Source: Oopsacas minuta (Eukaryota; Animalia; Porifera). From it: 64,000 nucleotides of DNA. The stretch lies in assembly GCA_024704765.1 (NCBI GenBank), contig JAKMXF010000288.1:372001-436000 (forward strand). Reading direction: 5' to 3'. The position numbers and the translations under genes were made by a program. The notes beneath the pieces are model-generated. The model searched no databases. It was not told where the DNA came from and worked only from the letters and a program-made list of their open reading frames with translations. Shown here piece by piece: positions 36,958 to 63,759 of the stretch. How positions within the stretch are numbered: position 1 is the stretch's first letter; each line of letters starts with the position of its first letter.

Positions 36958-39900
36958 ATGTTTATGGACATGTCATTAAGCTGCGACACAATTGCCAACA
37001 CACAAATTGACACTTCCCCCTTACGTAAATCAACATGCTACACGCACGAACAGACCACACATATATCAGATTCCACGGGTGCAGCTTGGTTGCTAGGCAG
37101 AGAGTATTATTTACCACAAGAAAAACCTGAATTTATTTCTGATGTAAATTCACTTCTATGGTTTAGTTATCGTAAGGGTTTCAAACCGATTGGAGGCAGT
37201 GGGAACCTGAAATCGGATACCGGTTGGGGGTGCTGTTATAGATGCGGACAGATGCTGATGGGACACTCCTTAATACGGTGAGTAACGGGCGGTACAATAT
37301 CTAATTGTCCTCATGTAGGTAAGAAGGAGGATTATTAGATAAAAGAAGGCCTCTAGAATATTCGTTAGTGTTTATAGTCATTTTGAGACACTCCTCGCTG
37401 TGTTTTGAGCTAAATTAGTGACTATACCTGCTACCAATTTCTCACCATTCCATATACTTACCAAGAACATCTGATCGGTTATAAGAATATGCCGGATATA
37501 AGCACCACCCTCTGGAAAACGGTTCTCATATATTCCTGTATATTATGCCGGTTATAGGAACATGTATTGCTACTCCCAAGGGTGTTCTTATAACCGGCAT
37601 ACACTCTATAATAAATACAATGATGAAGATTTATGATAGTCTACATTTAGTAACGCGTTAGGACGTGATTGGAAGTGGAGAGTCAAAGACAATGGAGTCG
37701 AGGATATGAACCCTCACTACCCTGTTATCCTAGCTGAATTCTTAGACACTAGCACAGCATGCTATTCAATACATCAATTAACTTCACAAGCTGTTGACTT
37801 TGGGAGAGATCTTGGTATGTAAATAACAACAAATATCTTGACATACATTAGGTGAAATGTTTATTACACCTGACTTTATCAATTTCCAGTGTCAGTAGGT
37901 GTTAACATATGTACATAAACCTTGTACATCAATAGGGGAACTATTAAATCTGATTGGTCACACATTTTGTCACCTATCTCAGAGTGATTTAGAGATATCG
38001 TTTAGATATTTTAAAGGTACATATTTATGTCATAATCCGCACAGGTGTCAAATTTCAAATTCATAACTCAAGAATGACATACCAAAATTATTATCAAAAA
38101 TTTGTTACTAATCATAGGCACTTGGGCTGGACCTAATACAGTAGCACAAGCACTGAGGTGTCGAGCTAAATCAGATCCGTTATGTAACATAGTTGTACAC
38201 GTTGCTATGGATATGCTAGTTATTAGGCAGAGTATTAAGAAGGAATGTCAGATGTCTGAAAGACGATTGGCGGAAGATATGCCAGTGGAAGTAGAGCCGC
38301 TATTTTCTCCCAGACAATTTTCTCTTTCATCTCCCATGGGTAAGTTATTGTCCCATGTGTGTTAACACCTTTTATAGACTCCAATATGGCCTCCTAATCT
38401 CATGTTTTGTACCCCATATGGGTGTAGCCAAATACCAACGAGGTAACCATGGAACTGGTACATAACACGTCACAGAAGCACGTTAGGGAGTTGGTGAATA
38501 TATTCATGTATAGAATGCAATGATTCATGGTATGTAATATGTGATTATATGTTATGTCCTCCGTACAAGGGTGTTAAAATATGAATAATCACCTTGGTTA
38601 CTATCCGTGGTATATTCACATATTATTGAAATATAATATGTATAAGCTCAGCTATAAATAATGAAAAACTATAGAATTCTGAGATAAATATGGCACAGAG
38701 TACAGATGTGAGTGAATATAATCCTCTACTCAAATCAATAACACCCCCTATACCAATTATCCCGCTGTATAAGTCGATTATTGTCACCTCAGACCACTAT
38801 ACTAAATCTCTAAGGAAAAGACTTGGCGAGATTGAAATGCGTCCACAACTCGATCTAACAGACGCTACTCTCCACCCTTACTGCTTGCAAAGTGATGTAC
38901 AAGTACATAACGCGCTGTATTTGGGGACTAAAAATTCTGCGTCGAATAGTTTGCCAGCTGGTGAGAAGAAAGTAACGATTGGAATTTATGCACAACTCCA
39001 ATTAGGTGTTCGATTCTTAGATTTCGAGGTGACGACTCTGAACTCTGAACTACAAATTGTGTGTAATGGCATTCCGTTGATGACTGGTAAAAAATTGTTT
39101 GAGATACTTAAAAGATTTGTTGACGAACAAAACGAACGTCACAACAAACTTGGTGAGAAGATTTTGTTGAATTTCCGTGAATGTGAATGTAAACATTTCT
39201 ATCTGTTACCGACACTTGAATTGTTAAGCGATCTAATCAAAGAGCTTCCTCCCTCGTATCTTGTAAAACGTGAAGACATTACTGAAAATCTGTCAGAAAT
39301 GGACGGAGTGTTTATCATATTCGGACCAATAGATCTAAATTTAGCACTTAACGGGACTCATGCCATGTTTAACTGGGGATCTAATTTGCTTGTTAAGGTG
39401 CAACCACGATTTAACGGTGATCCCAGCTGCATCCTACAATGGATAACTCATCAAAAGCGTGACAAATTCGAAGCTTTTCCCATTCCATCTCCACAATATG
39501 GTAACCTAGTCTGGCTTGATATTTCTGATCCGTTGTACAGAGGTGAAGCTAGTCATGAGGTCGGTTCTATGAAAGACGGAGGGCTGCTCTTCCCTACTGA
39601 AGCAGCGAGGTTTAATATTATTAGCTTTGGGTCACTGAATTCAATGGAAATAACTCTTTATATGAAATGTTATAGGAGACAGTGTAAAAATATATCTGCT
39701 GTTGTTTGTTAGATTTTTTTTGTATACAAAACTGTGTGAGCATTTTCACCTTTTCTCCGAGATGGTTGTACATCTACATACCAAGTTTTATATTGGTTGC
39801 TATGGCCATTTCTTCAATACAGTCAGAAATTATTTTCATTTTTGATTAATAAACAATCTTACTTTTAGAATCAGCCAATCAGATCACAAAGCCAGCAGCT

Positions 39901-42108: not shown

Positions 42109-43013
42109 TTTGGGGGGAAGGAGTTTAGGAATATTTCTAGTTAGCAGATTAGTGATTAGTAGTTTGTAGGAATATGTTTATTAAATAGCGTAGATTATAT
42201 TTGTTTGTTTGTTTGTTTGTTCACAGTTTGGTAAATAGAACATTCGCTATCTCGAGAAGATTTTGATTTCACCAGAGTTTGAGTTATCGGAAGTTAAACT
42301 GTATTTAAACAAACAAACACACACACACACACACACAAACACACACAAACACACACAAACATAAACAAAAACAAACAATTAACAATTCGACAGATAGACA
42401 ACAAACAAACAAATAATACAGTTTAATATCCGATAACTCAAACTTTGGGAAATCAATCTTTTCGGGATAGCGAATGTTCTATTTACGAGATGTTAACTAT
42501 ATAGAAACAAACAAACAAACAAACAAACAACACAGAAACAACAGACAACACAAGTTTGTTTGTTTATTTGTTACTTCCTCTTTGGTAATCTTATGATTGC
42601 AGTAATCAATTGTAATGCTAATATATCTTACAATAAATAAGATATGATTAATGATATGCTTAAGCATATGCTTAATCAAATAATATTACATTATTATATC
42701 TCATCAATGATATATACCTAACACACACATATAAATATTATAAATTTGATTCTGATTGAATTTTTTAACTTTCATGTTCCTGTCTGGGTCTCACTGTACC
42801 GATGCGATACACACAGTCAAACCTTGTTATATCTAAGCTCAAGGGACCGTGAGTATTCCTTCGATATGACCGATGGAATATATGTCACTTTGAAGGTTTG
42901 TGACCATATTTGCACAATTTCACACCTCGATATAAGCGGGTATTCCGGAGGTTTCACAATTGACACCTATTCATTAGTATATTCATATTTCATAGCTATA
43001 ATAGTATTAATAA

Positions 43014-46000
43014 ATGGATTCACTTCCAAATTATCCAAAAGAGTTTGACCCAAAAGAAGTAGAAAAGTTACGTAACTTTCTTAACAAAGCACTTCTATCA
43101 AAATACTTTACACCTTTCCTTAGCAACGGGGTGTATAGAGTGAAAGATCTACAGGAACACGTGAAGGATGAATTCCTATTGAGTGTTAATATGAGCCAAC
43201 CAGAGAGAGACAGGTTCTGGAAGAATGTGGAGCAAACAAGGAAACCACTTTGGAAATTGAAGGTGTGATAATATTATTAGCTCAAATTATTCTTCTGGGC
43301 AAAATGGACCTCCGAACACAGTAGGCTCTGCATAATATAGCCGCCGGTTAATCGGGTAAAAATGGCGTGTTCCCGATGTGAAAGCGGAGTCTACTGTATG
43401 TTTGAGTTCACGACACATTTGTGCCACTTTTCACACCTTATTATCTACTCCTTTAGCAAAAATTCCGGAGATATGAGGATCCTGATTCGAGTATTTATGA
43501 AGAAATTGGACAATCCAACACAACTCCTGTTAGTGGCGCCATTCTGATTAGTCATCAAGAAATAGTGGAATTAGGAATTATTGGTACAGGAAATTTTGGA
43601 GAGGTGTCAAGAGGAATGTGGCGCTATAACCACAACATGGCGCCTGTGAGTTGATAAACAAACAAACTAACTAACTAACAAACAAACAAACTAACACTCA
43701 TAATTGGTGTCAAAATATGAATATATACTACTTCCACTTTTCTAGAAACCAGTAGCTGTCAAAATAGTGTCCACAGTTTCAGGTGAGAACAGAGATCAAA
43801 TTATGAAAGAGGCAGAAGTGTGGAATAAATTGGAACATGAAAATATTGTTAGATTATATGGTGTTACTGTCACACAGCCTTACAAAATGGTATGTTGTTG
43901 TTGATTTCACACCTTGTGACAATATTTTACAAGATATTTAGTTTCAATTCCAATATAGATTATGGAACTAGCACCTAAAGGTTCACTAGACAAGTATCTG
44001 AGGTCTAAAGTTAATCAGCTGTCAATTGAAAGGATGTGGCAATATTCATGTCAGATATCTAAAGGAATGGAATATCTACATTCCAAGAGAATTATACATA
44101 GAGATCTTGCTTGTAGGAATGTATTACTTAGTAATGATACACAGGTATGTTTATTGGCTGTTGTGTACTTAGATTAGTAGCCTGGGTGATTATTCATATT
44201 TTAACACCCTTGTACGGGGGACATAACATATAATCACATACTACATTCCATGAGTCATAGCATTCTATACATGAATATATTCACCAACTCCCTAACGTAC
44301 TTCTGTGACGTGTTATGTCCCAGTTTCCATGGTTACCTCATTGGTATTTGGCTACACCCGTCAGTGAGGGAGGCAATCATTGAAAGAGGCTACTATTCGA
44401 GACAAAGGTGTGAAAATATACATATAACTAATCATTTTTAATAAACCAATGAAATGAGAGGGTTTGTAACAATCTAAGAAGTTCATCTATAAATAGAAGT
44501 GATTACGTCATCATCATTTCTAGTTGTACCAGTCTAGCGCTCGTATCTCCTGATAATCTATAGGGTAACATTCCTGCAAATGTCACAAGTTTGCGCGCCT
44601 TTTCTTGTAACAGCATTATGTCCTGCCTTATCTGCTGATCAGCTGTTCCATGGCCAATCATTTCTTGTGTTTGTTTATAGAGATTGTGTATTGAAATCTT
44701 GATAGAAAAATTGTATTATTGAACCATGGATAATTGCAATGTATTACAGCAACCCTCTATACCTATTTTAACATATTCTGTGGACCACCAAGGGGTTCAT
44801 GTACCCCAGGTTGGGAACCCCTGTATCGCAGTGTACCTCCACAAACAGGGTGCTAGGGGCGCCGAAATGCTACCCCGTTCCCCGTTATATTACAGAGATA
44901 TTCCCAGTTTGTGGAGGTTGCATTTTTTCATTTTGCCAATTTATCCATGGTTCTTTGATATACATTCAAAATGGTCATTGCAAATAATCTGAAAATTCAC
45001 ATTTTTAACATACCATTGTTGCAAGAATGACGTCAGGGAGACTTCTCCTAATCTCTTCCTCCAAGGTGTGAAATTTCGCAATACTATTATCAACAGTTAC
45101 ATCGGATTTAAGCGGGAAAATACCCAAACGGTCCATAATTTCTAGGGCAACATCGAATTGCCCCGATTTGAAATATTCATGGAATTGTGTCAGATCTAAA
45201 AGTAGATAAAAAGTTGTACACTTCTCGCGTGTGGCATTGTGTCCTGTTGTCTTGAATCTGTCAGCTAGTGAGTATGCGTATTGGATTATTTGTTGTTTTT
45301 CTGTGTCTCTTGAGCTTTGAGAAGATGATATTAATTGGGACATAGAATTATTGAGGAGGTCTAACACCTGTGAAGAAATGTAAACAAACAAACAAACAAA
45401 CAAACAAACAAACTAACAAACCTTTTGATGGTTACCAGCTAAATCATATAACTTAATAGCATCAATAACCAATCCATGGTTCTCTGATTTTCTAGCTACA
45501 TTACTAATGACGTCACTGATAGATTCCTTATGAAACTTCTCAATTAATCCTTGTTTCCTGACTCCATCAGGCGCCAAACTGCCTAGCAATAACTAGAAGA
45601 GATTGGAATGTTATAACATAGCAACAGGAAAGGGGTTAGGAATGTACATGCCTCGTATTCTCTTGACTCCCAAACCATCTCAGCCAATGAATTCACGAAC
45701 AAATCTTCACCGCCACCTAATGGAAAATGGTGTGAAAATAAAGTATACATGATTAATCATATGAATATTTCACACCTTCCATGCCACGTAACAAGAACAT
45801 ATATTGTATGGCTTCTCTAGGATCTGTAGTCACAAATTTCCTTGTATATACTTTGATCATTCTAGCTAGATTTATTTGAGGTCCAGTTGGTGTGTCGGTT
45901 AGAAATGCTGCTTGAGCAGTTGATGTTGATTTTATCAGATTTATTTGGTGAAGAGAGATCGCTAGATGGATCGCATGACACCTGAGTGTTTCTATCCGCC

Positions 46001-49000
46001 ACAAGAAGTCGATAGCCCGCTCAAATTGCAGTGATAGACAGAGTATCTAAAAATGGTACACCTTGAAAATTTCTCCATTAGTGTATCTATAATGAATCTC
46101 GCTAATACCAACGGAGTCTACTGTATTCTAAAAATAGAACAACCTGGAAATACAACATCGGTTTTTCATTTGCCCTAAAATGAGACTCTCCAAATTGATT
46201 GGTTATCTCCTGCTGGAATTGACCAATCAATTGTTTGTCTGCATGTTGTCCTTCTGGTAATTCTCCTGTACAATAGCATAGTCTTAGTTTCAACCACAAC
46301 CAATCCTCTGTTTTGGCAGCTGTTACTTCTCTATGTGGGTTCTTTATGTCACATTTAGCGAGTATGCATAATACAGCACGTTTGTATGGGTCTTTGATTT
46401 GAGAGTTTAGTTTCCTGCAAAAGTGGTTCACAGTCAATCCGTGTTATATCTAACACGGATATACTGAAATAACCGCTTATATGGAAGTGTGAAGTTGTAT
46501 GAATATGGTCCCAAACCATCAAAGTAACATACAGTTAACATACAGTTAACTCCTGTAATATCGAAGCTCAAGGGACCATGGTAATTACTTCGATGTAACC
46601 GATGAATATATGTAACTTTGACGGTTTATGACCATATTTGTATAATTCACACTTCGATCCATCCGTATACATACATTTTATCGGTATATAGAAGTAATTA
46701 TAACGATCCCTTTATCTTCAATGTGACTGGAGTTAAGTATATAATTCACTCCAAATATTCCCGAATATATTTAAGCCAGTTTAAGCGGGCTAATACACTT
46801 TTAAGCGGGCGTATTCTTACCAATAATTTCCTCTCAATTGTGCCTCTGCCTTGTGACTCAAATGTCCATCTTGTGCGAACTCCTTCAGGTATCCTACCCA
46901 ATCTGCAATTTGGTTAAGTGCACTCCCCGCACCGGTCAAGCCTTCCCTCAAACTTCCACAACGCATAGCAAAGAATAAAACAGCCCATAGCGGTTTTCCG
47001 TCCGAACTTCCATCTTCAAATCGTATTTGTGAGGTTTCGGGGGATAATAATATATTCAGATATGCCAGAACAAGTTGGTAGGGACCCGGGACACCAGTGC
47101 GTCGCGCCAGAGCCGGATGGGAACTTACGATATTCTCCATAAACTCCATATAACGAACCTCCAAATACGAAATACTTTTTCGAAGTAATTTGCTTTGTAA
47201 TGGAAGCGAACGAGGCGAGTGTAGATCCAGATCAGCTGATAAATTGGGTATATCAGTTTGTGCACGAATTAACTGCCAAATATCCAACATTCGTGCATTC
47301 TTATTGCTCAATGCAGTTGCTAGGAAGCTCTCAATCAAGTCTGGATGTCCGCCTAGATATTTTTTCGGGTAAGGGCTGCTCTATCAATTTGGTCTCCACC
47401 TCCCACATACTGGACTTAAGGAATTTGACACCTTTCAATAATCCCTACCCTCATATCTGAGGCAAAGTTTCTTATTAAAGTGATCAAACCCAGTCAGGAC
47501 TGGGAAGGTGGGAGGGGGCAATTGGTTACCTTTGAGAATCGCATCGGTATATATATACAGCTGTTTGGCATATGCTATTTCGAAACTATCCAAACTTGTC
47601 CTATCAACCATTGTCATTGGTCCAACTGTCATTTTTTGGCGCTCAATCACTATGTCAGTCAAATTCTGATCTGGTCCCAACGCGCCAAGGATTTTCTCCT
47701 TTTGTTTGTCCCAATCATCGTCTACTTGGTTCCATAATAGTTTCTCACACTTCTCTTGTACAGAATATCTAAATTGAGCTTTTATGACACCTATATGCTT
47801 ATCAGTTATCTAACCATGGATGGTGGATTTAGTAAATCTGCTTGGATATTGGAGGACAATTTTTGCCAAACAGGGCGATTGTTTTGTCGCCATATTTCAA
47901 ATGTCAAGATTGTTAATTTTGACTTGTCCACCCTAAGCCACTGACACACACACAAACAGACTAACAGGAAGACAGACGAAGAGACAGACAGACAGACAGA
48001 CGGTCTTGTCAATTTTACTCGATTTGTTACTCACCTGCTTTCCTTCACAGCTGCTACGAGAATATTCTCATAAGCGCTTTTAAGAAAACTTGAGAGGTCG
48101 ATATCTTTCTCTTCAGAGGGTATCTATAAATAGAAACTTAGTTCCAATTGGAACTTGGTAAATTAATTATTCCTAACACTTATCTCATCGTTTGGCTAAA
48201 TCTGATGAGAATAAGCAATTAGATTGCAGCCTGACAAACAGATGGAATTCACATTACATGTAGGCACATGACCTTTATGATAAAAGTGGAGCATTTCCCC
48301 ACATTCGACTGCCACTTGAGTGTCATAATATTACGTGTATAAAGCATATACAGTGGTGGATTTTGGCGCCTACATGAAACCTATGTAGGACGCTGAATTT
48401 TGTTTTGGTGGTAAAATGGGTAATTATAAATTCGTTTCGCCTGGTAGGTATAATTATGGAAATCGGCTGACTTGGTCGAATTTCTTGGTCGCGTGAAGGC
48501 CTGCGAGACGCTCATCCATCCGTGGTGGCTCTAAGCCACGTGATCCCAATAGTTTCACTGCCTGAAGGTCTACATTTTCTTTTGATGCCAGAGGGGCATT
48601 TTTTGTCAGAAGTTTGGATGCTGCATCTTGCAATTGTTGTAGATTTCTATTCAAAGTTGGTAATTCCTTGGTTACCAAGCCTGTGGATCGGAATGCTTGT
48701 GCTTTTTGTAAGAGTTCATCAAATGAACCTGGTCCTTGTGACATAGGATTCCTATAACAAGAATTCTAACAAATTAATTATTATCCTTGGTACAAGTGCC
48801 AATTTGCACATAGGGAAATCTGCCAATTGGAAATAGTTGTAATTAGCGGAACATTTGACGGGACCATTCATACTTGCAATTTGTCTACAAAAAAGTGAGA
48901 CATTGAACTCAATAAGTGCGAAAAGGTGAGACATCTCGCCAAAAATGTAATTGAAATATATTTTGTGAAGAAAAATAGCAGTGTTGCCATCGAAGTTATT

Positions 49001-52000
49001 TGCCACATTATTGAAATTTCATATTCTTGCCACAGACACAACAGTTCTTGCAATGTACATGCTATATCCATGCCACGCAGTCCATATTTATGTCTAAGAC
49101 CTGTAAAATTCATGAGGCAAGTTCTTGCAATGCTACCAAAATATTTAAAAATAGATACAAAAATTGGCTTCAATATATTATACATGTGTTTTATCATAAT
49201 ATACACTTTATGGGTGTATAATAATTACAAAATTATACAAGTGTTACGAGAATATTTCGTTGTGGTTCGATTTCAAACTCCTAATTGAGTCATAAGATTA
49301 ATAACAGTCCTGATAATCATCAATTCATCCAGCTGAGTCCTAATTTTAGCTATTTTAAAGTGTCCACGTTTAATTCCTGACAACTTTAACCTTTTTACCA
49401 AAACTGTTGATTCATCTTTACCCCTTTTATACTTGCTCCTCCTCCGCCAGGTGGTATTCTCTCTAGAACATTGACAAATCAAATTACAGTTTTGTTCCTT
49501 ATCTCATTTACAACTTTACCTTTTAAGAATGTCTGTTAATTTATTGAAATATTTACTTTCAAGTTTACCCGCAATTACTTTATTTATTTCAAACACATTT
49601 GGCGCACATCATGTGCTGAGCCTTGAGTGCTAAAGCCACTTTAACCACTTTTATAGAATCGAACAAATGTTCGACTTTTTGATAATTTTTGTTTCGTTAC
49701 CAAGGAAACCGCTTCCTTAATTATAGTTACGGAATGTAATACTTGCTAATGCAATATAATGTGGCTATTTTTTTCTATAATTTTAATGATATAATTACAT
49801 GATTCAACAATCTATTTTAGGAATTATACTGTAACCTTTTGACACAATCAGTTTCATATTTGTAGACCTGTTATTATTCAACCAATATAGACAAAACATT
49901 TGCATATTTCAAATCTAAACACTCATGAAAATTATTTAATATTTACATATTTACGTTCTGGATGGCAAAGGCGGATAAACAATTGAGTGTTGACGAAGAG
50001 TTTATCAGCAATGTAGATTCTAAAATATATCATTTGAAGGAGCAAGTCAAAAAGGATAAAGTTGAGATCAACGAAAAGTTTCGAGAATTAATACAGTCCA
50101 TACTGCAATGTCAAGAGAATGTTTTGGAAAGAATGGACGATACTTTGCATGAGGCTATAAGCGAGGTGACTAATCAAACTATCGAAATCACAAAATTGTC
50201 AGCAAATAAGGAAAATTTCAAAAGTGTGGGGAATGTCGGCATAGTAGATGAAATTCAAAACCAAATTCAGGATTGTAAGCTCCATGGCAAATATGTTCCA
50301 GAAATCCACATAAATTGGAAAATTGAACCACTTACGAAAGAGTTAGGTGAATTATGTCAAATAGAACCCACAAACCATCCTTATGCTTATTTAGGGGAAG
50401 ATTTGAATAGCATCAAAGCAGAAGGCATGCTTAAAAGCGTACCTACATCTTTCGAAATTGATGCGCGTAATGGAGATGTCTATCTTCTTTGTAATGAAGA
50501 TTCAGAGAATTTTGACTTCAGAATTTTAGTTGTTGATAAACTTGGCAAATCGAAATTCGATAGGAAGCTCGAGAGGAAATTCTGTCCAGTTGGCATGTGT
50601 GTGGGTGAAAATTCCTTTTTTGTGTCAACTAGTGGTGGCAGTGCCAAAGCTCAAATGGACTCTCACAGAAAAGAACTCCCAGTCGATACTGAAATCCAAC
50701 AGTATCAGGAAAATATCCTGAAGTTTGATAAAGAGAATGGAAAAATGGAAAACTTTCCAATAACTGATGTTAAAGAAATCGGCCTAATTGCATATGAACC
50801 TAAATCTAAATCTTTGTTCTTGCTCACCGGCACAAAAAATTCCCCTATTTTGCTTGTTTTCGATTCGGAAACAATATCGAGAAAGGCAAGTACGAATTTA
50901 GAACTGAGGTCTGGATATATTTCCTCTGCCCCAAAGATTCAAAAAATTGAAATTTTCAACGAAAATGTCATTTTGTTTTACGATAAATCCAAATACATCG
51001 ACGTTTACGATTTGGAAGGAAGACGTTTGTCATTTTTTCCTGATGGAGAATTTATTTCTCAGCTCACAACATCCGACGCTTGGGGAAATATCTTGGCATT
51101 CAATAAGAAGTCTAATGTCATGAAAATAATGGATAAAAATCACAAACTGTTGTCGCAGAGTGTCATCCAGTTAGATTGTGATCCAATAGACCTAAAGTTC
51201 AACATTTCAACTCACAAAGTTCTTTGTTGCGGCCTTGTGAAGGAATCTAAACTGAATCTAGTTCATTTATACATATAGTATTTTCTAATTTCGTTGCAGC
51301 AATATTATTTACTTCGTCTCCCTTTGAACCTTCCACAAGTTGCCTCCCATGACTTTTTCGAAAAGCAGAATTTGCCTCGCAGCCGCAGCCCCTTCCCCCT
51401 GTAAGGGAGTATTTGAACGGCCCCTAAGCAATCCCAGTCTGAGTCAAAACAAATTCTCTCAAACAAACAAATATACTTCACACTGAACAATATTATCCAA
51501 TTAGTTAACAGAAATTTATACTCATAAACATTAAGTAAACATTCCACACATACTTGTCATCACCATGGCAGCCTAATACTCAATTTCCTTCCTGAGTTTA
51601 GTGATCATCATTTCGCGTTTGAGTGCGTCAATTCTTGAAAACTCAATTTTTGTTACTTTGTGTTTATCAAAAACTTTTACATCCGTTTCGGCGATCAGCC
51701 GTGCAACTTCCCAGTCAGCGAAGTCAAAAACTTCCCCCTCAATTGCATACCCTTTCATTTCTTTAGCCACACGCTCTGCTTCCAAAAGCAACAATTTTGA
51801 TACTCCTCGTTTTTGGAAATTTACACTTACGGCCACTGCTTCTAAATATATAATTTTCTTCATTTCATTCTCTATATTTTCCATATAATGACTGATTGAG
51901 AGTGAACCGATCATTTCATCGGTTGCCTTCAGAAATGCGATTAATATTCTCCCTTTTTCCCGTGTTTCTTCAAAAATTTCGGGTGTAAACCTCACATATT

Positions 52001-55000
52001 TTTGTAAATCAATATTTTCGTTATAACCCTTGTCAGAGTTAAATGCATTGTTTACCATCTGAATGCATTCTAAGGAAGTTGATTGGTCAACATCTCTGAA
52101 AATTACTTCATGTTGCTTGATTTTTGACACTTCTTTTGAGGCCATTTTTTTTGGAAATTTTTTTTCACGAATTTATATTTATTTTTGCATGTTGTCATCT
52201 ATAAATTATTTCATAATAATGATTGTATTTTGGGGAACCATAGGAACACAGTTCTCATTAATTATTTTATTTGGCGCCTAATACGTGTTAATTTGATTAT
52301 ATAAATTGACATCGATATGTAGATAGATCCATCAAACAAAATATCGAATTGAATCACTTTTACATTGTTTTTACATTGCCGCCAAATTTATATATATTAC
52401 AAAAACAAATCCCGCGTGTTTGACCCTCATATGGCGCTAAAAATATTAAAGTTCCAGTAATGGCGCTCAAATTTTTAGGAGCTTTAATATGCGTTAATTA
52501 AAAAATCATATTTAATTGGTCGATTCGCGCCCCTCTTGTCAATATCATTTGACTTTAACTAATAGAATCGTTGATTTGAGTGAATACTCATTCTATTTTC
52601 ATCTGTCTCCCTTTGGGTTTGGCGCCTGAATTTCATAAACTACAGGAAATATTCTTTTCAAAGATAATTAATCTGGCGCTCTTCAGCTAATAACCATTAT
52701 GTATAAATATCAATATATGTAAATTTACAGGTCTTGGGTGGCATAACTCATCCTACGACCATCTGACCACATTTATTCAATATGTGTACTCCAGACTATT
52801 CATATTAAAATCATGCTAATTTGGGGAAAGTTTGTGAAAAATGTTTGGACCGCTGGCGTAATCTGTCCCCCAACCTGGTGTTAATTGGTCCCTAAGGGTT
52901 CTCACACAGCTTGTGGCTGAGAGAAGGTTCGATGGTTTGTAAACACCCTTAAAGTGGAATGTGCCCATAAATTCCATTTTTCCCCACTATCTTGTCGAAA
53001 ATTAGTTCAGTCAAACTGTTATTCTCTCCCTAACAACCAATAGTTGACTAGGAATGCAAAGTTCTGAGATGCTAGCCAATCTAATAATCACAAACCAAGC
53101 AATGAATCGTGGAAATTGAATTTGTACAAAATGGTTTCTAACTTTTTAGGTTTTAAATAACTTCCTTACAATCCTAGAAACATGAAAAGGGTTGATTATA
53201 ATAAACCCATATTTGTAAGAATATTCTATGGCTCTGCGACACTATTTACTTCCCACATCTGTTCCAAATACGAAGAATAATGTGACACTATTGTTTGTGA
53301 CAACAATTATGTTTTATCCTGTTGTTTACGAATTCTTATAGAAATTGTTTGTTTACTGTTAGTGACACAAATATTTGAAAATTTGGAAATCAGGTTTGGC
53401 ACCTAGCGGACACTGAAAATATTCACACCTTTTGAGAGATTAAAAAGTGAAACGTTGAGCAAATATTCGTTTGTTAATTTCAACTTAGAACTCGCACTAA
53501 ACTGATATATTTTCTTAGTTACTAAATTGGCAATAGGAATGTTCAATTTTGTAGACCTCTCACTAACAAACCAGATACGTCTAGGCTATTAAGGTATTAC
53601 ATAGCAACCAAGATTAGCATTAGAATGTATGCTCGATAGTTCACAACAGTATGCATATGTTTCCACATAGTTTTATTATCACCATAGCACCTTAATAGTA
53701 TTATGGAATGCCTCTTTAACCTTATACGGAGATTGGAATTTGTATTTATAATAACTTCACCCCTGGGGCGTGTTCAGAGATTTTATCCACAAAATGGTTG
53801 AGCCACAATTCATGCCACATTTGAAACCCTCCAATCTGATTGGGTCATAAAATTACTTGAAAATAACATGATGAACATCCTTATGACTAACCAACAGGTT
53901 TCAGAATACACTTGCTGTTACCTCACGTCACTTATCTGTCAAGAAATGGTTTCATATTGAACTTAAACAAATAAGATTTTTGTTGTTTGTGAACCCAAAA
54001 TGTTTATTGCCATTTTTATGGCATGTTGAATAGATTAAAATTATAGCATTGATGGTTGCCTTAGATAGTGGTCATTCATCTTTTGAATATTATTTGAGAA
54101 TTCGTATGGTCTCTTTGAGATATTTTGCTACGCGTCCGGACTGAATGAGGGATCTCGTAAGAACTTTGCTATAGGATATTTTACAGGCCCCAAGTTTGGG
54201 TACCTGGGGGATCTGGAAAAGTATCAAGAATTCTGTGTGTTGTCCTCCTAGTTTGATTATGTTTCCGAAAAATTGGCGCCTTTATGGATTTGACCTCTAA
54301 CACACCTCAGGGTGGTCTATTGAAAAGTGTCGAATTCCAAACCACAGTCCTACATGGTTGTTTTTAAATTGGCCACTTTGGTAAATAAACATATGTCACA
54401 GCAATGACGTGAAATTCGAATTATTTGTAAGTAGTTTTTGGTTACAATTGTGGATTTCTGCCTTATCTGCTTACAATCATAGAATTACATATATATGTAA
54501 CCTTTTGGTTCCATTAATTAGCATAGCTTTATCTATATGATGTACCCAACTAATTGATTTTTAAGTATTTGAGGTTTATGCGTAAGTTGTCAGTTTAGAA
54601 ATGGAGCATTTTCCAAGAAGTAACCCGCGTATTTCGCTTTTATATGGCGCCTAAAAGAGAACTATTCCAGTAACTGGCCCTTAAACTTCAGTACTTGTGA
54701 TAGAACATGTAAATTTTTATATATTTCATTGAATAGGAATCCTTTTGTCCTATTCTCGTGTGATGCATGCTTTGTAGTATTACACATTCCTTCCATTCAC
54801 CATAGCAACCATGAAAACGTCTTAGATATTTTTGATGATTTTTCCTTAAAATTGATTTGATTTGCAATTTCTTATACCCATTAGTATTTCTTTACAAAGG
54901 TTGTGCTTGGTTGTTAATTAAGATGGCCAGTTCAGCAGCCATAAAGGACACAAAGTGCCGACCCTGAGGCTCAATTGGTGCAGGATCAATATGTTACGGT

Positions 55001-58000
55001 CAAAAAGTGCTGGCTCATACATTCCTAGAGAAAACCCTGTTTGCGTCACGTTTTTCCATGATTTGCGCATGATTGCCCGCGTGTATCGCCAAACAATCAT
55101 TTAATCATATTTGAGCGCGTATTTATAACAAAGTTCAATTGTTCAAACCCCAAACTCTAATTTTCAAATCACTTAAGTTTTGGAATGAAGTGATATCTCT
55201 AAAACTGCTTATAATTGTATTAACGTGATATCTCCGCACAGCCAAATTGCAACTTCTTTAATTTACTTAAAGCAGTTTCCACATTATTATTTATAGAAGT
55301 TTGCGTAAGGTCCTGGACAATTATTATAATTTTGAACATTAAGGGGTAGTTGTATAGCAAACACTTTCGACACAGCTCGTGTCGAAGGAGTTTATTGAGT
55401 ATCATTCCTCACAAAAATATGAGAAAATTATCACCAAAACCCGCTATATTGACTTGTATTGTTGTTGTTATTATTAATCTGTTTACAACAATAATTCATT
55501 CTAAACAAAAAATAATTAAACCCAAGCTTAATTCAGTTACAAAATTCATTTCTTAAATACCAATCAATTCCCATTAATCAATAAATGTCAATCATTCAAC
55601 TGTTTAATAATTAAATATTCATATTTACTATTTTGTATACAATTGGCGACGAAATATGATTAATTCACGCCTCACTACTCCCTTGATAATTGAATATTTT
55701 GAAAGTTTTGTTCATTTTTCTGAGAGTTTTTGATTTCCTTTCTTTTCCAATAATTTCATTTTGTTCCTCAAAACTGTGAATTTCATTTTTGATTTCGAGA
55801 ACTGATTTTGATTGGAGGAGAGAAGACATTCCAGATGGCGCGTTCGGTTTCAAATACTCAATCGCCCGCCTAGAATTATTATCCCGCAATTTTATATCAG
55901 CTCTAAATTCAACTACTAACGTCTCTACTACATTCCATTTCCCAGATTGCGTTGCTAGGTGTAGAGGTGTAGAACCTGACACTGACCGGATGTCAATTAA
56001 GGCGCCAGAAGTTAATAACATTGCGATAATATCATTCCGACCCTTTTTTGCTGCCCAGTGGAGTGCGGTGTACCCAAAAATATGGTCCGCACAGTTCACT
56101 AAATGTGTGTCTCGCGTTAAGAGTCTTAAAATAGAATCCGCATCACATTCTCTGGCGCTTTTATTCCACGAATTCCTATCGTTCTCTTTGATCTCTAAGG
56201 AAGCTTCTAAATCCAAACTGCTGGAATTCAGTGAGGACTCTAAGGATTTTTCTGGCGAATATGTCGGCTGCTCGCCTGTACTTATTCGCTTATGAATCCA
56301 TTTCTTGTTGTTAAAAGTGTCAAAAATGGCATGAATTGAGTGTCTGTGTTTGTCACTTTTTTGGGCTTGTAGATTTATTTTATTTTGTAACTCGTCTAGA
56401 TCTTCTTTCATCAGCTGTTCCAAATTTTCAGATTTTACTCTTTGGTGATTGCAGTTGGATTTTGGTACTCCACCAATGAACTGTAATTTCGTCTCTTTCC
56501 GAGATGACGATCCTCGTTCGCTGTTCGAATCATCACTCCATTTTGTATCCACGTATAGTGGAGAACTTGTTTGACTGAGTCGCTTAGGAAATTTTATTCT
56601 GCTATTTGCCCCCAAGTGGTCTTGTGGTGATGAAATATCATATTCTCTACAAATGCCACTTTTATTCAATTCATTCAAGAGCTCTAGCGACGCATTTTTT
56701 TGGAAATTCGTTTGACGAGATAAAATTTCAATCATTTTAAAACCCAGTTCTTGTATAATATATAGAAATTGGCTAGTAGCTGATATTTATATACTATTAA
56801 GACTATTTTAAACTGGAACTTAAAATGGAACTAAGGATTCTAGGGACTTTATATGAATCTTTCTATGTGTGTAAAATATCTTATTTTAAATTTACATATG
56901 AATATTACTTTGAAAAGCGTTTTGTTGGTGTCCATTGTCGAATTTTTTTGTACAATGTGGGTAAACACTTAATTGCCAACTTTGGCGCCTTTCATCATTG
57001 AAAAATTGTTCATCAATTTTAAGGGGATCCCCAAACTCCTTCCCTTCTTCACGCTAATTTATATTATTTATTCTTTTAGGTTAAAATTAGTGACTTTGGG
57101 ATGACACGATTCCTACCCACTGAACAGGACTTGATTCAAACTTTCACACCTCAAAAGGTCCCATATGCATGGTAATATTCCTAGAAATACACATAAATTC
57201 ATATATTTCGAGAGGAAATGTCCTCAATGCAAAAATCCACGAAAATCGTAAAATTATGCCACTTGTGGTGACCTGTGCGGACACCTTAAAATTCCAAATT
57301 TTGATGCCTAGAAGGGTGTCATTAATAATGCTATCCAATTTGTAATTTTATTTATTGATGTAGTTCATGATATGAACTATATGGTTACCCGCCTAACGCC
57401 CACACCGCGTCACAAAAACACCCGCCAAATAGAATGGAGTTTTAGTTTCAATTCAAACCGCAGAAACTTTAATCGGGGTTTTAATCAATTAGGACTGCTA
57501 TAGAGGTGTTGGAGAGCGGGCAATATTCTAATGCAAATGATGTTTGGAGTTTTGCTGTAACACTTTGGGAGATATTTTCACATGGCGCCAAACCGTGGAA
57601 GGATTTAAATGTAAAGCAAGTAAGTTATACTGGACCATGGATGATATGATTAACTCTATTTGTTAAATGAATCAAGGATATTATGGGTGAATCTTACTCA
57701 CAAGTGGAAGTAGATTATGATGGTCAAAAAAGGTGAAATTCCAAAATGGTGGTCGCTGTCCAATTGGTTTATCCAGGAATTCTGCACTTTGTGTCCTTCA
57801 TGGCTGCTGAACTATAGGTGTCTGCCACACCTAGATTGAGGGCGCTGACCGCCTGTGGCACATGACTATTAGGCAGTTTTGAGTATATTTCTAATTAGGT
57901 TCTTGCTCAATTACAGATGGAAAACAGATTGGAACAACCATTTATTTGTAGTGAAGAAATTTTCTCTTTGATGTCAAGGTGTTGGAATAAGGAACCAAAG

Positions 58001-60038
58001 GAGAGATTAACATTTACTAAAATAATATCACAACTTGAGAGGGTAACAACAAACACACAAACACACAAACAAACAAACAAACAAACAAACAAACAAACAA
58101 ACAAAACAGATAAACATGCAAACAAACATACAAACAACAAACAAACAGACAAGCAGACAATCAATCAAACAAACAAACAAACAAACAAACAAACAAACAA
58201 ACAAACAAACAAACAAACAAACAAACAAACAAACAAACAAATACACAAACAAACCAATGAACAATATCTCTTATAGATGAAGCCTCAGTTTGCTATTGCT
58301 AAGATGGACTCTCCTTCCAACTTAGATGAGGATCAATGTGTCCCTTATAGGAAAGATGACATCATCAATATTGTTGAAAAGTGTGTTTATTGTTGTTTGT
58401 TGTTTGTTGTTGTTTAAGATTGTTTATTTAGGAAATTAGGAGATTATTGGATAGGACAAAGTCAAGTCAATCTTAAATCTGGATATGTATTATCTTCTGA
58501 TATGGAGACGGACACTAGGAGTGAGTTATCTACTTTTGTGCCAATTCTATTTAACACCTCTCTCTTGAGAAAGTTGGGGACTTCAAAACTGATCTGTGAC
58601 CTCTGAGGGAGGCTAGATGGTGCCCTGATTGGATACTTATCCCTTTGTTGTCTGTATGTAACATACGTATGCTTCATCATGGATTTCCTTCTTTCTCTTA
58701 GAAATCCATGCAATTCAAAGAATCAAATCCAAACGAAAAAAGCAACGAAATGTACCGACACCTCCACTACCACCACCACCACCATCAGAATATCAAAATT
58801 TGGATGATTTTGCCCAGTTTAGAAAGAAAAATATTGAACATGATGGTGATTCAGAACATCCATATGATAATCTAAGTGGATTTCAACAGGAGAATAATCC
58901 ACCAGATGATGAAACACCTGATATCGTTTATGAGGAACCTGATACTTTGAGCAAACCTTCAAAAGATCAGTAAGTTGCCTCCACCACTTTATCAAATGAA
59001 ATTTCGTTCCCTTTGTATTCGATTTTGGATATTTTCATATATTTTATATTTATCACCAAATTATATCCCCCGACTATTTTATCTTTTCCCCGCCAAAAAA
59101 ATAGGCGGGGAAATCATTAATAGGCGCTAAGTTAGTGATTTACTGGCGCGTGTTTTTAGAAGATATTTCTCAGTGTGTTTGGCGAATAGAATGAAGATAA
59201 CAGATTCTGTTGGCTATACTACCATGAGTCCTGGAGGAGTATTAGCAGAGAATAATGTGGACAGAGAACTGGAAGAGCGAGGTCTAGTTGGAGACGAGAG
59301 TGGATCTGAAAGTGAAGACCCTCCTTATCAGGAAATTGGTTTGTGGAAGGGTCGTTTGAAAGTAGAGTATACTGTATTTATGTATATATTTTAGCTAGAA
59401 GCTTCGATGCCTACGAAACACATCAAAGACAGGCAGATGAAGACAGTGACGGCTATCACCTACTTTCAGAAATTGACACGATTACATTACGAAAAATCGA
59501 CGGGGATTACAAACCGAAAAATGCATTCTATGATGATACTATTAATAGCGATTCAGCACTTACCCCTGAACAATTAACAATGAGAAAAAGAGCCAGTAAA
59601 ACTTTCGAAAAACGAGGAGATTTAAATCCTCCTCGTAAAAATAATTATGAAAATTCGCCCACATACCCGAAACCAATTCCACCACCTAAGTCCAATAAAC
59701 TGAAACTATTTAGCCGACAAAACACTGACACAAAAATAGTGAAGAAATATTCCAGACCCATAAATGAATCGATTTTATCCGCGGAATTTCCCCAAATTCC
59801 TGACAATGAAATAAGTGTAATTCTAGAAATGTCTTTGGGAAGTTTAACCGAAGCGAGGAAAGATGCAAAATTTCGTATTTTCCGTGAACACATGCTGGAA
59901 CAAAATCCAATGCTACAATCTGTATTTTGCTATGACGTATTTCAAAAATCTAATTTTGACTCGGAAAAAGCAGAAAATGTAATAATGGAAAAATATTCAA
60001 AAAGACGGGAAGATGGCTGCTATGAATATTTATCTTGA
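43014..60038 (+). CDS. TNK2: ACK/TNK2-like non-receptor tyrosine kinase (SAM-kinase-SH3-Tyr-rich tail-UBA-like)
   Basis: Exon 43014-43262 is a SAM domain. It is followed by GTGNFG (from 43457), VAVK, and [16 protein letters not shown] ending at 44144. The gene resumes at 57080 with VKISDFGM...[26 protein letters not shown] and CWNKEPKER, then SH3 exons at about 58278-58530 and a C-terminal UBA-like segment. The 3' exon boundaries are approximate. Confidence 0.85.
44170..44400 (-). mobile_element. MITE family A copy (inverted) at the start of the large kinase intron
   Basis: Reverse-complement match to 7017-7214; terminal GGCTACTATTCGA at 44388-44400. Confidence 0.8.
44503..48744 (-). CDS. 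NUP93: Nuclear pore complex protein Nup93 (multi-exon)
   Basis: Starts FDELLQKAQ...[11 protein letters not shown]; contains [37 protein letters not shown] and [15 protein letters not shown]. The last exon, translated by hand, is [28 protein letters not shown] with stop at 44503-44505. Confidence 0.93.
49962..51278 (+). CDS. Coiled-coil + NHL/beta-propeller-like protein (TRIM-NHL-like without RING/B-box), intronless, 438 aa
   Basis: Helical heptad-rich first ~110 aa, a W...L...LG.L linker, then beta-rich repeats (PTSFEID...[27 protein letters not shown]). Confidence 0.6.
   Translation: MAKADKQLSVDEEFISNVDSKIYHLKEQVKKDKVEINEKFRELIQSILQCQENVLERMDDTLHEAISEVTNQTIEITKLSANKENFKSVGNVGIVDEIQNQIQDCKLHGKYVPEIHINWKIEPLTKELGELCQIEPTNHPYAYLGEDLNSIKAEGMLKSVPTSFEIDARNGDVYLLCNEDSENFDFRILVVDKLGKSKFDRKLERKFCPVGMCVGENSFFVSTSGGSAKAQMDSHRKELPVDTEIQQYQENILKFDKENGKMENFPITDVKEIGLIAYEPKSKSLFLLTGTKNSPILLVFDSETISRKASTNLELRSGYISSAPKIQKIEIFNENVILFYDKSKYIDVYDLEGRRLSFFPDGEFISQLTTSDAWGNILAFNKKSNVMKIMDKNHKLLSQSVIQLDCDPIDLKFNISTHKVLCCGLVKESKLNLVHLYI
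51573..52145 (-). CDS. GNAT-family N-acetyltransferase, intronless, 190 aa
   Basis: Motif A: [29 protein letters not shown], preceded by a beta strand MIGSLSI. Confidence 0.8.
   Translation of the reverse strand: MASKEVSKIKQHEVIFRDVDQSTSLECIQMVNNAFNSDKGYNENIDLQKYVRFTPEIFEETREKGRILIAFLKATDEMIGSLSISHYMENIENEMKKIIYLEAVAVSVNFQKRGVSKLLLLEAERVAKEMKGYAIEGEVFDFADWEVARLIAETDVKVFDKHKVTKIEFSRIDALKREMMITKLRKEIEY
55665..56735 (-). CDS. Ankyrin-repeat protein, SOWAH (sosondowah)-like, intronless
   Basis: [17 protein letters not shown] and [14 protein letters not shown] ankyrin pair after a disordered N-terminus. Confidence 0.75.
   Translation of the reverse strand: MIEILSRQTNFQKNASLELLNELNKSGICREYDISSPQDHLGANSRIKFPKRLSQTSSPLYVDTKWSDDSNSERGSSSRKETKLQFIGGVPKSNCNHQRVKSENLEQLMKEDLDELQNKINLQAQKSDKHRHSIHAIFDTFNNKKWIHKRISTGEQPTYSPEKSLESSLNSSSLDLEASLEIKENDRNSWNKSARECDADSILRLLTRDTHLVNCADHIFGYTALHWAAKKGRNDIIAMLLTSGALIDIRSVSGSTPLHLATQSGKWNVVETLVVEFRADIKLRDNNSRRAIEYLKPNAPSGMSSLLQSKSVLEIKNEIHSFEEQNEIIGKERKSKTLRKMNKTFKIFNYQGSSEA
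58044..58260. repeat. (AAAC)n microsatellite-rich intron
   Basis: Long imperfect ACAA/AAAC array. Similar tracts lie at 7643-7689, 16190-16280, 42300-42420 and 45385-45420. Confidence 0.9.
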
Positions 60039-60539
60039 AGTATTTTATTTGTATATATTTTGCTATGATTTGTTGTTTTATGCTATTTTATATGTGTGAA
60101 CATTTGATGTTTGTGCTTCTGATAAATTTGGTGAGATTTTGGCGGGAGTCCCATTTTCTTTTCCTTCAAATACTCTCTCGATTTTGTTTGGTGACTATTG
60201 AGAGAGTATTTGCATATTTTGACCAATTATACACATTTCTTTGCTCTCTATGCCCAATATTTTGGTCCAATTAACCACCAATCTGCCCAAATGATGTTTG
60301 TTTGTAATAGAGTAGACTCTCTGGATAAGTGACAAGTTGGGGACATCGCTTCTGTCCGTTTTGGGAGACTCCACTGTATATATGTACACTACAGTCAGCT
60401 GTTATATCTAACATGGATATATCGAAACACCCGCTTATTTTGAGGTGTGAATTTTACAAATATGGTCACAAATCGTTAAAGTAACATATGCTCCATCGGT
60501 AATATAATTATCACGGTCCCTTGTTGTGTTGTTTATTAG

Positions 60540-61277
60540 ATGTTGTCGAGTTTCACAGTCAAAATATTTGTCATCACTATTCTCTTCACATGTAACGCGC
60601 CAATTTCATTTTGTTGTTCCAGATCTTATTCAAAAGCTGCTCGTAATATTTTGACCGAGAAAGGATTTTTTGAATCAATAGAGTCGTATGATCTTCCTAA
60701 AAATTGCCCTCTGCATCCTGCCAATGACGTGTTTGTTGTCCAAGAGGATCACAAATTCCATGACCCCTATAACAAATGGGGATGCGGGTTTTGCGGGAAG
60801 TTTTTCAGTAGTGAGCATTTTTTGGATTTGCATTTCGACCGGAAACATGATCATGAGAGAAAAAGTGGCACAAATGTGGCGTGTTTGGCTGATTTTTGCG
60901 ATATTCTCAGGTGTGATATTTTAAGTGGCGCCGTCCAGACCACTTATTGGGAATTAGCCCTTTGTGTCGATTCCAAATTTGACACTTTGAGAGAACGATG
61001 TCATAAAAGTATCCTTGATTGCTTGGATACAAGTTTGGATGCCAAGAATGTTGAAACATTCTTGAATACATCAGATAGCTTATTGTGCTCAGACTTGAGG
61101 TGTGAAAAGTATTATATAACAAACAAAGATTCACTGATGGATTATTTGTATTATTTCTTTAGATATTTGTGGATTTTCTTGACTTGTATTTTTATTTGTT
61201 TTATTTATGCTATTTGTTGTTCTGTAACGTTGTATCAATCTGAGATGAGTGAAAGAGAGAAATTGAAGGTTAATTAA
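60540..61277 (+). CDS. Signal peptide + single C2H2-like finger + Cys-rich region + C-terminal transmembrane helix, 245 aa
   Basis: Hydrophobic N-terminus, WGCGFCGKFFSSEHFLDLHFDRKH, CLADFCDILRC and TM segment LWIFLTCIFICFIYAICCSV. Confidence 0.75.
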   Translation: MLSSFTVKIFVITILFTCNAPISFCCSRSYSKAARNILTEKGFFESIESYDLPKNCPLHPANDVFVVQEDHKFHDPYNKWGCGFCGKFFSSEHFLDLHFDRKHDHERKSGTNVACLADFCDILRCDILSGAVQTTYWELALCVDSKFDTLRERCHKSILDCLDTSLDAKNVETFLNTSDSLLCSDLRCEKYYITNKDSLMDYLYYFFRYLWIFLTCIFICFIYAICCSVTLYQSEMSEREKLKVN

Positions 61278-61590
61278 GTTGTTGTTGTTGATGTTTATTT
61301 CACGATTTTATTGTTGTTGTTGATTTGCGAATGAGCCAACAATGCACAGTGTGGCAGAATGGCCATAATGGGGAAATAGGTAAATGAATCTGTATTATCA
61401 CCACAATTATACTTACATATACTAAATCGACACTGTAGATTTCAAAAATACCAATGATTTTTTAGTAGCACGACTACAAACCTAGTTATGACGTAATTAC
61501 TTACATTTTCTAATTTTTAACACTTGTGGTTCATTAGTGAGGATATTATGAAAGTTGATAATACATGCATGTCATGGTCTCTATTCTGCT

Positions 61591-63729: not shown

Positions 63730-63759
63730 GTAATTTATGTATATATTTAATCTAACACC

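What the first reader, a model, noticed from the sequence alone, without database searches (positions are those of the whole stretch)
44145..57079. An ACK/TNK2 kinase domain split by a 12.9-kb intron that contains four whole genes, including NUP93
Seen in sequence: the kinase exon ends at [16 protein letters not shown]|GT (44144), and the next kinase residues VKISDFGM start after an AG at 57080, in the correct phase, joining subdomain VIb to VII with nothing missing. Between them lie multi-exon NUP93 (-), a coiled-coil/propeller gene (+), a GNAT (-) and SOWAH-like (-). Other introns here are mostly 50-600 bp. Inference: this is one host transcript spanning an essential, intron-rich gene plus three others, or two half-transcripts joined by trans-splicing. 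Either would be unusual.
Basis: partly seen in the sequence, partly recalled or inferred. Interest (0 to 1): 0.85.

Follow-up and report, generated by a model that had tools for sequence, protein, structure and literature searches.

The report
Split kinase gene hosting four genes
In the glass sponge Oopsacas minuta, one ACK-type tyrosine kinase gene is interrupted by a 12.9-kb intron holding four complete genes, a layout shared by five related genomes; this is normal for glass sponges, but the public annotation wrongly splits the kinase in two.

Summary
Kinase exon E4 ends at 44144 (…[16 protein letters not shown]|GT). The next kinase residues (VKISDFGM…) start at 57080 after an AG, in phase 0. 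Pfam kinase-profile positions run on across the gap (E4 to 138, E5 from 141).

Between the two exons lie NUP93 (-), a coiled-coil/propeller gene (+), a GNAT (-) and an ankyrin gene (-).

The window is Oopsacas minuta scaffold JAKMXF010000288.1. GenBank annotates the kinase as two half-genes of 266 aa and 541 aa.

Five independent long-contig assemblies of related species show the same layout:
- The order is E1-E4, NUP93, (propeller), GNAT, ANK, then E5 onward.
- GT and AG sit at the same codon boundary wherever the exon is in the fetched DNA, across introns of 9.7 kb to more than 19.9 kb.
- Both halves are intact and under purifying selection.

An assembly misjoin and a pseudogene are therefore excluded.

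The best reading is one roughly 804-aa ACK-like gene with a conserved nest of guest genes, mis-split by an annotation pipeline that rarely calls nested genes. Glass sponges are already published as rich in nested genes. This scan also noted other multi-guest introns elsewhere in this genome.

The parts
43014..43262 (+). Kinase gene exon E1, from the start codon; N-terminal SAM domain of the TNK/ACK type
   Evidence: Pfam PF22931 SAM_TNK, E 1.8e-7, 31.6 bits against a cutoff of 25. Conserved in relatives.
43457..43645 (+). Exon E2 (linker and glycine loop GTGNFG)
   Evidence: ORF and splice context. tblastn to relatives gives 48-61% identity.
43746..43889 (+). Exon E3 (VAVK lysine, alpha-C helix)
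   Evidence: Pfam PK_Tyr_Ser-Thr profile positions 30-74.
43959..44144 (+). Exon E4, ending in the catalytic loop HRDLACRN...Q and followed by a GT donor
   Evidence: Pfam profile positions 79-138. 74-84% identical in five relatives, with GT at the same codon boundary shown in four (A-D); for E the same exon end is read from its read-through ORF.
44145..57079 (+). The 12,935-bp phase-0 intron that hosts four genes
44503..48744 (-). Guest 1: NUP93/Nic96, multi-exon, 819 aa in GenBank. Its stop codon lies about 360 bp from the E4 donor.
   Evidence: Pfam PF04097 on two exons. Annotated range. About 80% identical in relatives.
49962..51278 (+). Guest 2: single-exon coiled-coil/propeller gene, 438 aa, on the same strand as the host
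   Evidence: Weak TRIM_CC hit. The exact protein is in NCBI. Relatives B, C and D have a 37%-identical gene at this place on the opposite strand; A and E have none.
51573..52145 (-). Guest 3: single-exon GNAT acetyltransferase, 190 aa
   Evidence: Pfam PF00583, 31.2 bits against a cutoff of 20.7. ORF. 60-66% identical in all relatives.
55665..56735 (-). Guest 4: ankyrin-repeat gene, 356 aa. Its start codon is 345 bp from E5.
   Evidence: Pfam Ank/Ank_2. Annotated range. 57-66% identical in all relatives.
57080..57172 (+). Exon E5, starting VKISDFG (DFG motif) after a pyrimidine-rich tract and AG
   Evidence: Pfam profile positions 141-170. AG|GTTAA(A/G)AT kept in relatives A, C and D.
57494..58039 (+). 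Exons E6 (57494-57619) and E7 (57899-58039): the rest of the kinase C-lobe
   Evidence: Pfam profile positions 171-211 and 213-258.
58277..60038 (+). Exons E8-E12: SH3-like region, proline-rich tail, C-terminal exon and stop. The E11/E12 splice choice is not settled.
   Evidence: tblastn to relative A. The GenBank 541-aa model ends at 60038.

Best explanation
This is a single ACK/TNK-family non-receptor tyrosine kinase gene of the glass sponge Oopsacas minuta, about 804 aa, with the architecture SAM - kinase - SH3-like - long tail. An ancient phase-0 intron between kinase subdomains VIb and VII is about 62 bp in a bilaterian Ack gene. In this sponge lineage it has grown to 10-20 kb and carries a stable nest of guest genes: NUP93, GNAT and an ankyrin gene on the opposite strand, plus a variable propeller gene. 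Inferred, not shown: the host is most likely transcribed across the nest and spliced in cis from 44144 to 57080. The two GenBank models are annotation artefacts of a pipeline that seldom allows nested genes. One is 266 aa and reads through the donor into the intron. The other is 541 aa and starts at the Met right after DFG.
For: Sequence and domains:
- Canonical GT...AG, phase 0 on both sides, and a pyrimidine-rich acceptor.
- Pfam kinase-profile positions continue across the gap, 138 to 141.
- Gap-free alignment of the joined model to insect Ack.
- SAM_TNK domain in E1.
- No other kinase exons in the window.

Comparison with relatives:
- Five independent metagenome assemblies with long contigs (126 kb-1.25 Mb) have the same order: E1-E4, NUP93(-), [propeller], GNAT(-), ANK(-), with E5 onward seen in A, C and D. 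B and E end inside the nest.
- GT follows E4 at the same codon boundary in A-D (for E the same exon end is read from its read-through ORF), and AG precedes E5 in A, C and D, across introns of 9,749, 9,807, 17,552, 16,403, more than 19,900 and more than 10,200 bp.
- Wherever fetched, both halves are free of stops. dN is 0.18-0.30 while dS is saturated; dN/dS is 0.06-0.16 where it can be computed.
- The read-through tails after E4 are not conserved.
- An in-frame TAG sits directly before E5.
- The same intron position and phase occur in an unrelated animal's Ack gene, where the intron is about 62 bp.

Context:
- A Nextera junction-adapter artefact implies a real DNA fragment spanning 55552-61590.
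- The literature reports that glass sponges are rich in conserved nested genes, and that the O. minuta annotation found few of them for methodological reasons (PMC10282587).
Against: No RNA-derived protein crossing the junction was found in the protein collection, and the length and ranking limits of those searches make the blanks weak. The public annotation has two separate models. One guest, the propeller gene, lies on the host strand, so host transcription would have to read through its poly(A) site. Spliced-leader trans-splicing exists in glass sponges (PMC10282587), so an acceptor alone does not prove cis-splicing.
Confidence: 0.8

Rival explanations
1. The two halves are transcribed separately, with the 3' half perhaps driven from the 345-bp region shared with the divergent ankyrin gene. 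They are then joined by mRNA trans-splicing into one kinase mRNA.
For: The splice sites and phase fit this as well as they fit cis-splicing. E5 lies only 345 bp from the start of a divergently oriented gene. Glass sponges possess trans-splicing machinery, of the spliced-leader type (PMC10282587).
Against: The first and last 500 nt of the intron show no complementarity beyond chance: the longest match is 9 nt, and 139 of 200 shuffles do as well. Intron-sized nests spliced in cis are the documented norm in glass sponges. An earlier follow-up in this scan reports, from RNA, a host spliced across three guests elsewhere in this genome (s1-242589, not checked here). Gene-internal trans-splicing is rare in animals (own knowledge).
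Confidence: 0.05
2. The GenBank annotation is right. The halves are two independent genes giving a 266-aa SAM+N-lobe protein and a 541-aa C-lobe+SH3 protein. The second might be made from a spliced-leader-capped mRNA that starts at E5.
For: Two models are annotated. The Met directly after DFG is conserved in every relative in which E5 was fetched (A, C, D). An SL acceptor cannot be told from an intron acceptor by sequence alone.
Against: Neither half would be a functional kinase. The 266-aa model ends in 10 residues of intron read-through that are not conserved in any relative. The spacing from HRDLACRN to DFG (12 residues) and the phase are kept exactly wherever both exons were fetched. This points to selection on the joined sequence. 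The paper on A. vastus describes exactly this split error, in which neighbouring models match the first and second halves of one homologue, as a common annotation fault (PMC10282587).
Confidence: 0.08
3. The interval is an assembly misjoin or insertion artefact, and the kinase is contiguous in the real genome.
For: The scaffold does contain an assembly artefact nearby: a Nextera adapter, then a 267-bp duplicated block, then a 608-N gap at 61591-62484.
Against: Five other assemblies from long contigs, two of them with two contigs each, show the same nest between E4 and E5. The adapter artefact itself implies a real fragment of about 6 kb joining the ankyrin gene to the 3' half of the kinase.
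Confidence: 0.01
4. The kinase was broken by a rearrangement and both halves are decaying pseudogene fragments.
For: None beyond the physical separation.
Against: In all six genomes every kinase exon within the fetched DNA is open, with splice sites kept. dN is far below the saturated dS in both halves.
Confidence: 0.01

Closest known systems
Nested genes of glass sponge genomes (Aphrocallistes vastus and Oopsacas minuta; Francis et al. 2023, PMC10282587)
   Same: Small compact genome; complete genes sitting in introns of other genes; many nests conserved between species. The O. minuta annotation under-calls them, and the paper describes neighbouring models that each match half of one homologue as a common annotation fault in A. 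vastus.
   Different: This particular nest is not mentioned in the passages of that paper that I read. It consists of an ACK-type kinase host with NUP93, GNAT and an ankyrin gene, plus or minus a propeller gene. With four guests, the intron is about 38 times the genome's mean intron length.
Classical multi-guest introns: human NF1 intron 27b (OMG, EVI2A, EVI2B) and the large intron of Drosophila dunce (own knowledge, not tested here)
   Same: Several complete genes, mostly antisense, inside one intron of a host gene that is spliced in cis.
   Different: Those hosts have generally long introns. Here the host's other introns are 50-320 bp, and one guest is on the host strand.
ACK/TNK family kinases (human TNK2/ACK1 and TNK1; insect Ack, e.g. 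P0053 and P0097)
   Same: N-terminal SAM_TNK domain, tyrosine kinase domain, an SH3-like region directly after the kinase, and a long proline-rich tail. The intron position between HRDLACRN...Q and VKIxDFG is shared with a bilaterian Ack gene.
   Different: No CRIB/GTPase-binding (PF09027) or UBA domain was detected in the tail. The APE motif reads AIE.
Gene-internal mRNA trans-splicing (Drosophila mod(mdg4) and lola; Giardia Hsp90). Own knowledge.
   Same: Exons of one protein encoded far apart, with other genes between them.
   Different: Those cases involve separate promoters, often opposite strands or distant loci, and in Giardia complementary intron halves. Here the exons are collinear on one strand with ordinary splice sites, and the intron ends are not complementary.

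Membership tests
ACK/TNK non-receptor tyrosine kinases | N-terminal SAM domain of the TNK type | tested here: met
   PF22931 SAM_TNK, 31.6 bits against a cutoff of 25, on E1. The same domain is called in relatives.
ACK/TNK non-receptor tyrosine kinases | Complete tyrosine kinase catalytic domain | tested here: met
   E3-E7 tile PF07714 positions 30-258. GxGxx[13 protein letters not shown] and DFG are present. Exons were tested separately, because a joined sequence could not be submitted. E4 alone matches EGFR and JAK kinases best in the PDB, so the kinase piece by itself does not identify the family.
ACK/TNK non-receptor tyrosine kinases | SH3 domain immediately C-terminal to the kinase | tested here: inconclusive
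   E8-E9 align to the SH3 region of insect Ack, but the two short exons give no Pfam hit on their own.
ACK/TNK non-receptor tyrosine kinases | CRIB / Cdc42-binding region (ACK1 subtype only; absent in TNK1) | tested here: not met
   No PF09027 hit on E10, E11 or E12, nor on the relative's last exon. No ISxPxxxFxHxxH motif appears in the alignment. This argues against the ACK1 subtype, not against the family.
Nested (intron-hosted) genes | Guest genes lie wholly between two exons of one host gene | tested here: met
   All four annotated guests lie within 44145-57079. The host exons on both sides belong to one kinase domain.
Nested (intron-hosted) genes | Host mRNA is spliced across the guests | not testable with these tools
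Protein-database searches found no junction-crossing product. The junction 32-mer is absent from JGI metagenome contigs, which is uninformative.
Gene-internal trans-splicing | Separate primary transcripts for the two exon blocks, often with complementary intron halves | tested here: inconclusive
   Complementarity is no better than chance. Transcript structure could not be examined.

The most novel reading that the evidence does not exclude
The two kinase halves are made as separate primary transcripts. The 3' half would come from a bidirectional promoter shared with the ankyrin gene. They are joined by gene-internal trans-splicing, a mechanism conserved across at least six glass sponge genomes. 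This would spare the host from transcribing through an essential convergent nucleoporin gene and a same-strand guest.
Probability: 0.05. Interest if true: 0.75.

Novelty: new member of a known kind. Interest (0 to 1): 0.22.

Why it matters
The practical gain is a correction. Two GenBank models of O. minuta, each half a kinase, should be merged into one ACK-like gene. This bears on counts of tyrosine kinases, and on claims of missing or truncated signalling genes, in early-branching animals. It is also a concrete example of how gene finders that disallow nesting break host genes.

Biologically, the locus is a well-conserved nest. An essential nucleoporin gene converges on the host within about 360 bp of a splice donor, and the guest content varies between species: the propeller gene is present, absent or on the other strand. 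That makes it a reasonable test case for transcriptional interference and for how nests grow. The phenomenon itself is already described for glass sponges.

Tried and rejected
The junction is therefore untested at the RNA level.

2. Searches for an RNA-derived or annotated protein crossing the junction:
- E4 against cluster representatives found only a relative's genomic ORF and distant kinases.
- E4 against the 90% clusters found four genomic ORFs of relatives.
- A profile on a full-length insect scaffold was flooded by insect Ack proteins.
- A 110-column profile of E4+E5 added a fifth relative but no junction-crossing fragment.
These blanks are weak because of the length windows and the 120-row listing limit.

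3. The spliced-junction 32-mer was absent from JGI metagenome contigs, which is uninformative.

4. The multi-fragment protein alignments A1 and A2 misplaced short exons and were not used for searches.

5. Rfam found no RNA family in 42500-61000.

6. tblastx and blastn found no conserved coding sequence in the 3.5 kb between the GNAT and ankyrin genes. A fifth guest there is unlikely.

7. The assembly-misjoin idea was raised by the exact 267-bp repeat and the N gap. It was rejected once the Nextera junction adapter explained the repeat and the relatives showed the same nest.
Full report
**Observation.**
- Exon E4 (43959-44144) ends with the catalytic loop [16 protein letters not shown] and is followed by GTATGT.
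- Exon E5 (57080-57172) begins [11 protein letters not shown] directly after a T-rich tract and TAG.
- Both boundaries fall between codons. The intron is 12,935 bp.
- Scanned exon by exon, the Pfam tyrosine-kinase profile is tiled with nothing missing: E3 covers positions 30-74, E4 79-138, E5 141-170, E6 171-211 and E7 213-258.
- A joined model, built only inside a script, aligns to two full-length insect Ack proteins with no gap at the junction.
- tblastn of each exon against the whole window finds no second copy of any kinase exon.

**The host gene.** E1 (43014-43262) carries a SAM_TNK domain above Pfam's cutoff. This domain marks the ACK/TNK family.
- The domain order is SAM, kinase, an SH3-like stretch (E8-E9, aligned to the insect SH3 region), then a proline-rich tail.
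- Pfam finds neither the Cdc42-binding/CRIB region nor a UBA domain in E10-E12.
- E4 by itself matches EGFR and JAK kinases best among solved structures. The family call therefore rests on the SAM_TNK domain and the architecture, not on the kinase piece.
- I call it ACK/TNK-like, without a detectable CRIB.

**Where the window comes from, and what the public annotation says.** Exact look-up of two guest proteins showed they are NCBI proteins. Their locus is GCA_024704765.1, JAKMXF010000288.1. The genome paper gives JAKMXF as the Oopsacas minuta whole-genome project (PMC10280926). The annotation there has these models, in window coordinates:

| Model | Window range | Strand |
|---|---|---|
| 266 aa, SAM_TNK + kinase | 43014-44177 | + |
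| Nic96/NUP93, 819 aa | 44503-48744 | - |
| 438 aa, coiled-coil/propeller | 49962-51278 | + |
| GNAT, 190 aa | 51573-52145 | - |
| Ankyrin gene, 356 aa | 55665-56735 | - |
| 541 aa, kinase | 57101-60038 | + |

- The 266-aa model is E1-E4 plus ten residues of read-through into the intron.
- The 541-aa model starts at the Met that follows DFG.
- The public annotation therefore cuts one kinase domain into two genes.

**Is it an assembly artefact?** A 267-bp exact repeat (55552-55818 and 61610-61876) abuts the window's only N gap and at first suggested a problem.
- The second copy is preceded by the 19-nt Nextera junction adapter at 61591-61609, with none expected by chance. The genome paper states that Nextera Mate Pair libraries were used.
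- The second copy is therefore an artefact of a read across a circularised mate-pair fragment.
- That artefact implies a real DNA fragment of about 6 kb, running from the 3' end of the ankyrin gene to beyond the end of the kinase.

The stronger evidence is comparative. The E4 peptide retrieved genomic ORFs from five ENA metagenome assemblies, on contigs of 126 kb to 1.25 Mb at 115-315x coverage.
- All five show RING gene, ATG4 with a guest, RPS18, then kinase E1-E4, NUP93(-), GNAT(-), ANK(-). Where the fetched DNA reaches far enough, E5 and later exons follow.
- The E4-E5 intron is 9,749 and 9,807 bp in the two contigs of assembly A, 17,552 bp in C and 16,403 bp in D. It is more than 19,900 bp in B and more than 10,200 bp in E.
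- GT follows the last E4 codon in A-D, and AG precedes GTTAA(A/G)AT wherever E5 was reached, that is in A, C and D. For E the same exon end is read from its read-through ORF.
- The residues read past the donor differ completely between species, as expected for intron sequence.

**Selection.** Between the window and these relatives, synonymous sites are saturated, while dN is 0.18-0.30 in both halves. dN/dS is 0.06-0.16 where it can be computed. No fetched exon has a stop or frameshift. The number of residues between HRDLACRN and DFG is identical wherever both exons were fetched. This fits selection on the joined sequence. A misjoin and a pair of decaying fragments are both excluded.

**Age of the intron.** In an unrelated animal's Ack gene (a Logan contig, L013), the same codon boundary carries a phase-0 intron of about 62 bp. 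The intron position is therefore old, and in this sponge lineage it has been inflated by guest genes.

**The nest itself varies.**
- NUP93, GNAT and the ankyrin gene are present in all six genomes, on the strand opposite the host.
- The propeller gene is on the host strand in O. minuta.
- A 37%-identical gene sits at the same place on the opposite strand in B, C and D.
- A and E have none.
- The 3.5 kb between the GNAT and ankyrin genes holds no conserved coding sequence. Rfam finds no known RNA family in 42500-61000.

**How it most likely works.** Shown: the two exon blocks belong to one conserved, selected coding sequence, with ordinary splice signals, on one strand, in one order. Inferred: RNA polymerase II transcribes the host across the nest, and the intron is removed in cis. 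I could not test this.
- Three protein-collection searches designed to catch an RNA-derived product across the junction found none.
- A junction 32-mer is absent from JGI metagenome contigs.
- These blanks are weak, for reasons given under Tried and rejected.
- A simple check for complementary intron ends, as in Giardia-type trans-splicing, gave nothing beyond chance.

**Comparison with what is known.**
- Francis et al. [quoted passage not shown] A. vastus has 2,432 (12.4% of genes), and about half of its genes are in microsynteny with O. minuta.
- The same paper counts only 83 nested genes in the O. minuta annotation. It attributes such low counts to gene-finder settings.
- It describes neighbouring models that match the first and second halves of one homologue as a typical annotation error (PMC10282587).
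- Earlier notes of this scan list other nests in the same window (ATG4, a STARD7-like gene) and multi-guest introns elsewhere in this genome. One has a follow-up reporting RNA support for host splicing across three guests. I did not check that claim. I did see the ATG4 guest conserved in the relatives.
- Multi-guest introns are also classical in human NF1 and Drosophila dunce (own knowledge).

**Verdict.** It is an ordinary feature of this kind of genome, not a new mechanism. Its value lies in correcting a split kinase annotation and in giving a well-documented, conserved example. Trans-splicing remains formally open at about 5%.

Noticed in passing
window 61591-62484: The Nextera mate-pair junction adapter (19 nt, exact) is left in the assembly. 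It is followed by a 267-bp exact copy of 55552-55818 and then the window's only N gap (608 N). This is an assembly artefact from a read across a circularised fragment of about 6 kb. The duplicated partial ankyrin-gene end at 61723-61875 is not real.
   Followed up: yes
window 43014-44177 and 57101-60038: GenBank annotates two half-kinase genes here, of 266 aa and 541 aa. The first reads 10 residues into the intron. The second starts at the Met directly after DFG. They should be merged.
   Followed up: yes
window 49962-51278; L008 10001-11653; L009 10919-12268; L010 11012-12364: The propeller guest is on the host strand in O. minuta. A 37%-identical gene is at the same place on the opposite strand in three relatives, and two relatives have none. 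This means gain, loss or inversion inside a conserved nest.
   Followed up: partly
window 44172-44401, 38405-38603, 63759-63988, 7034-7137: A short interspersed repeat family, with copies 92-95% alike. One copy starts 28 nt after the E4 donor, between the donor and the NUP93 stop codon.
   Followed up: no
window 58040-58276: The intron between kinase exons E7 and E8 is almost entirely (AAAC)n-type microsatellite. The same repeat type recurs in several other introns of the window (family D1).
   Followed up: no
window 38340-39868; L001 1967-2947 and equivalents in all relatives: The ATG4 (Peptidase_C54) gene upstream also carries a conserved guest ORF of about 326 aa between its exons in all five relatives. 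That is a second conserved nest in the same window.
   Followed up: partly
window 44503 versus 44144: The NUP93 stop codon lies only about 360 bp from the kinase E4 donor on the opposite strand. The NUP93 3' end and the start of the host intron must therefore overlap or nearly touch.
   Followed up: no
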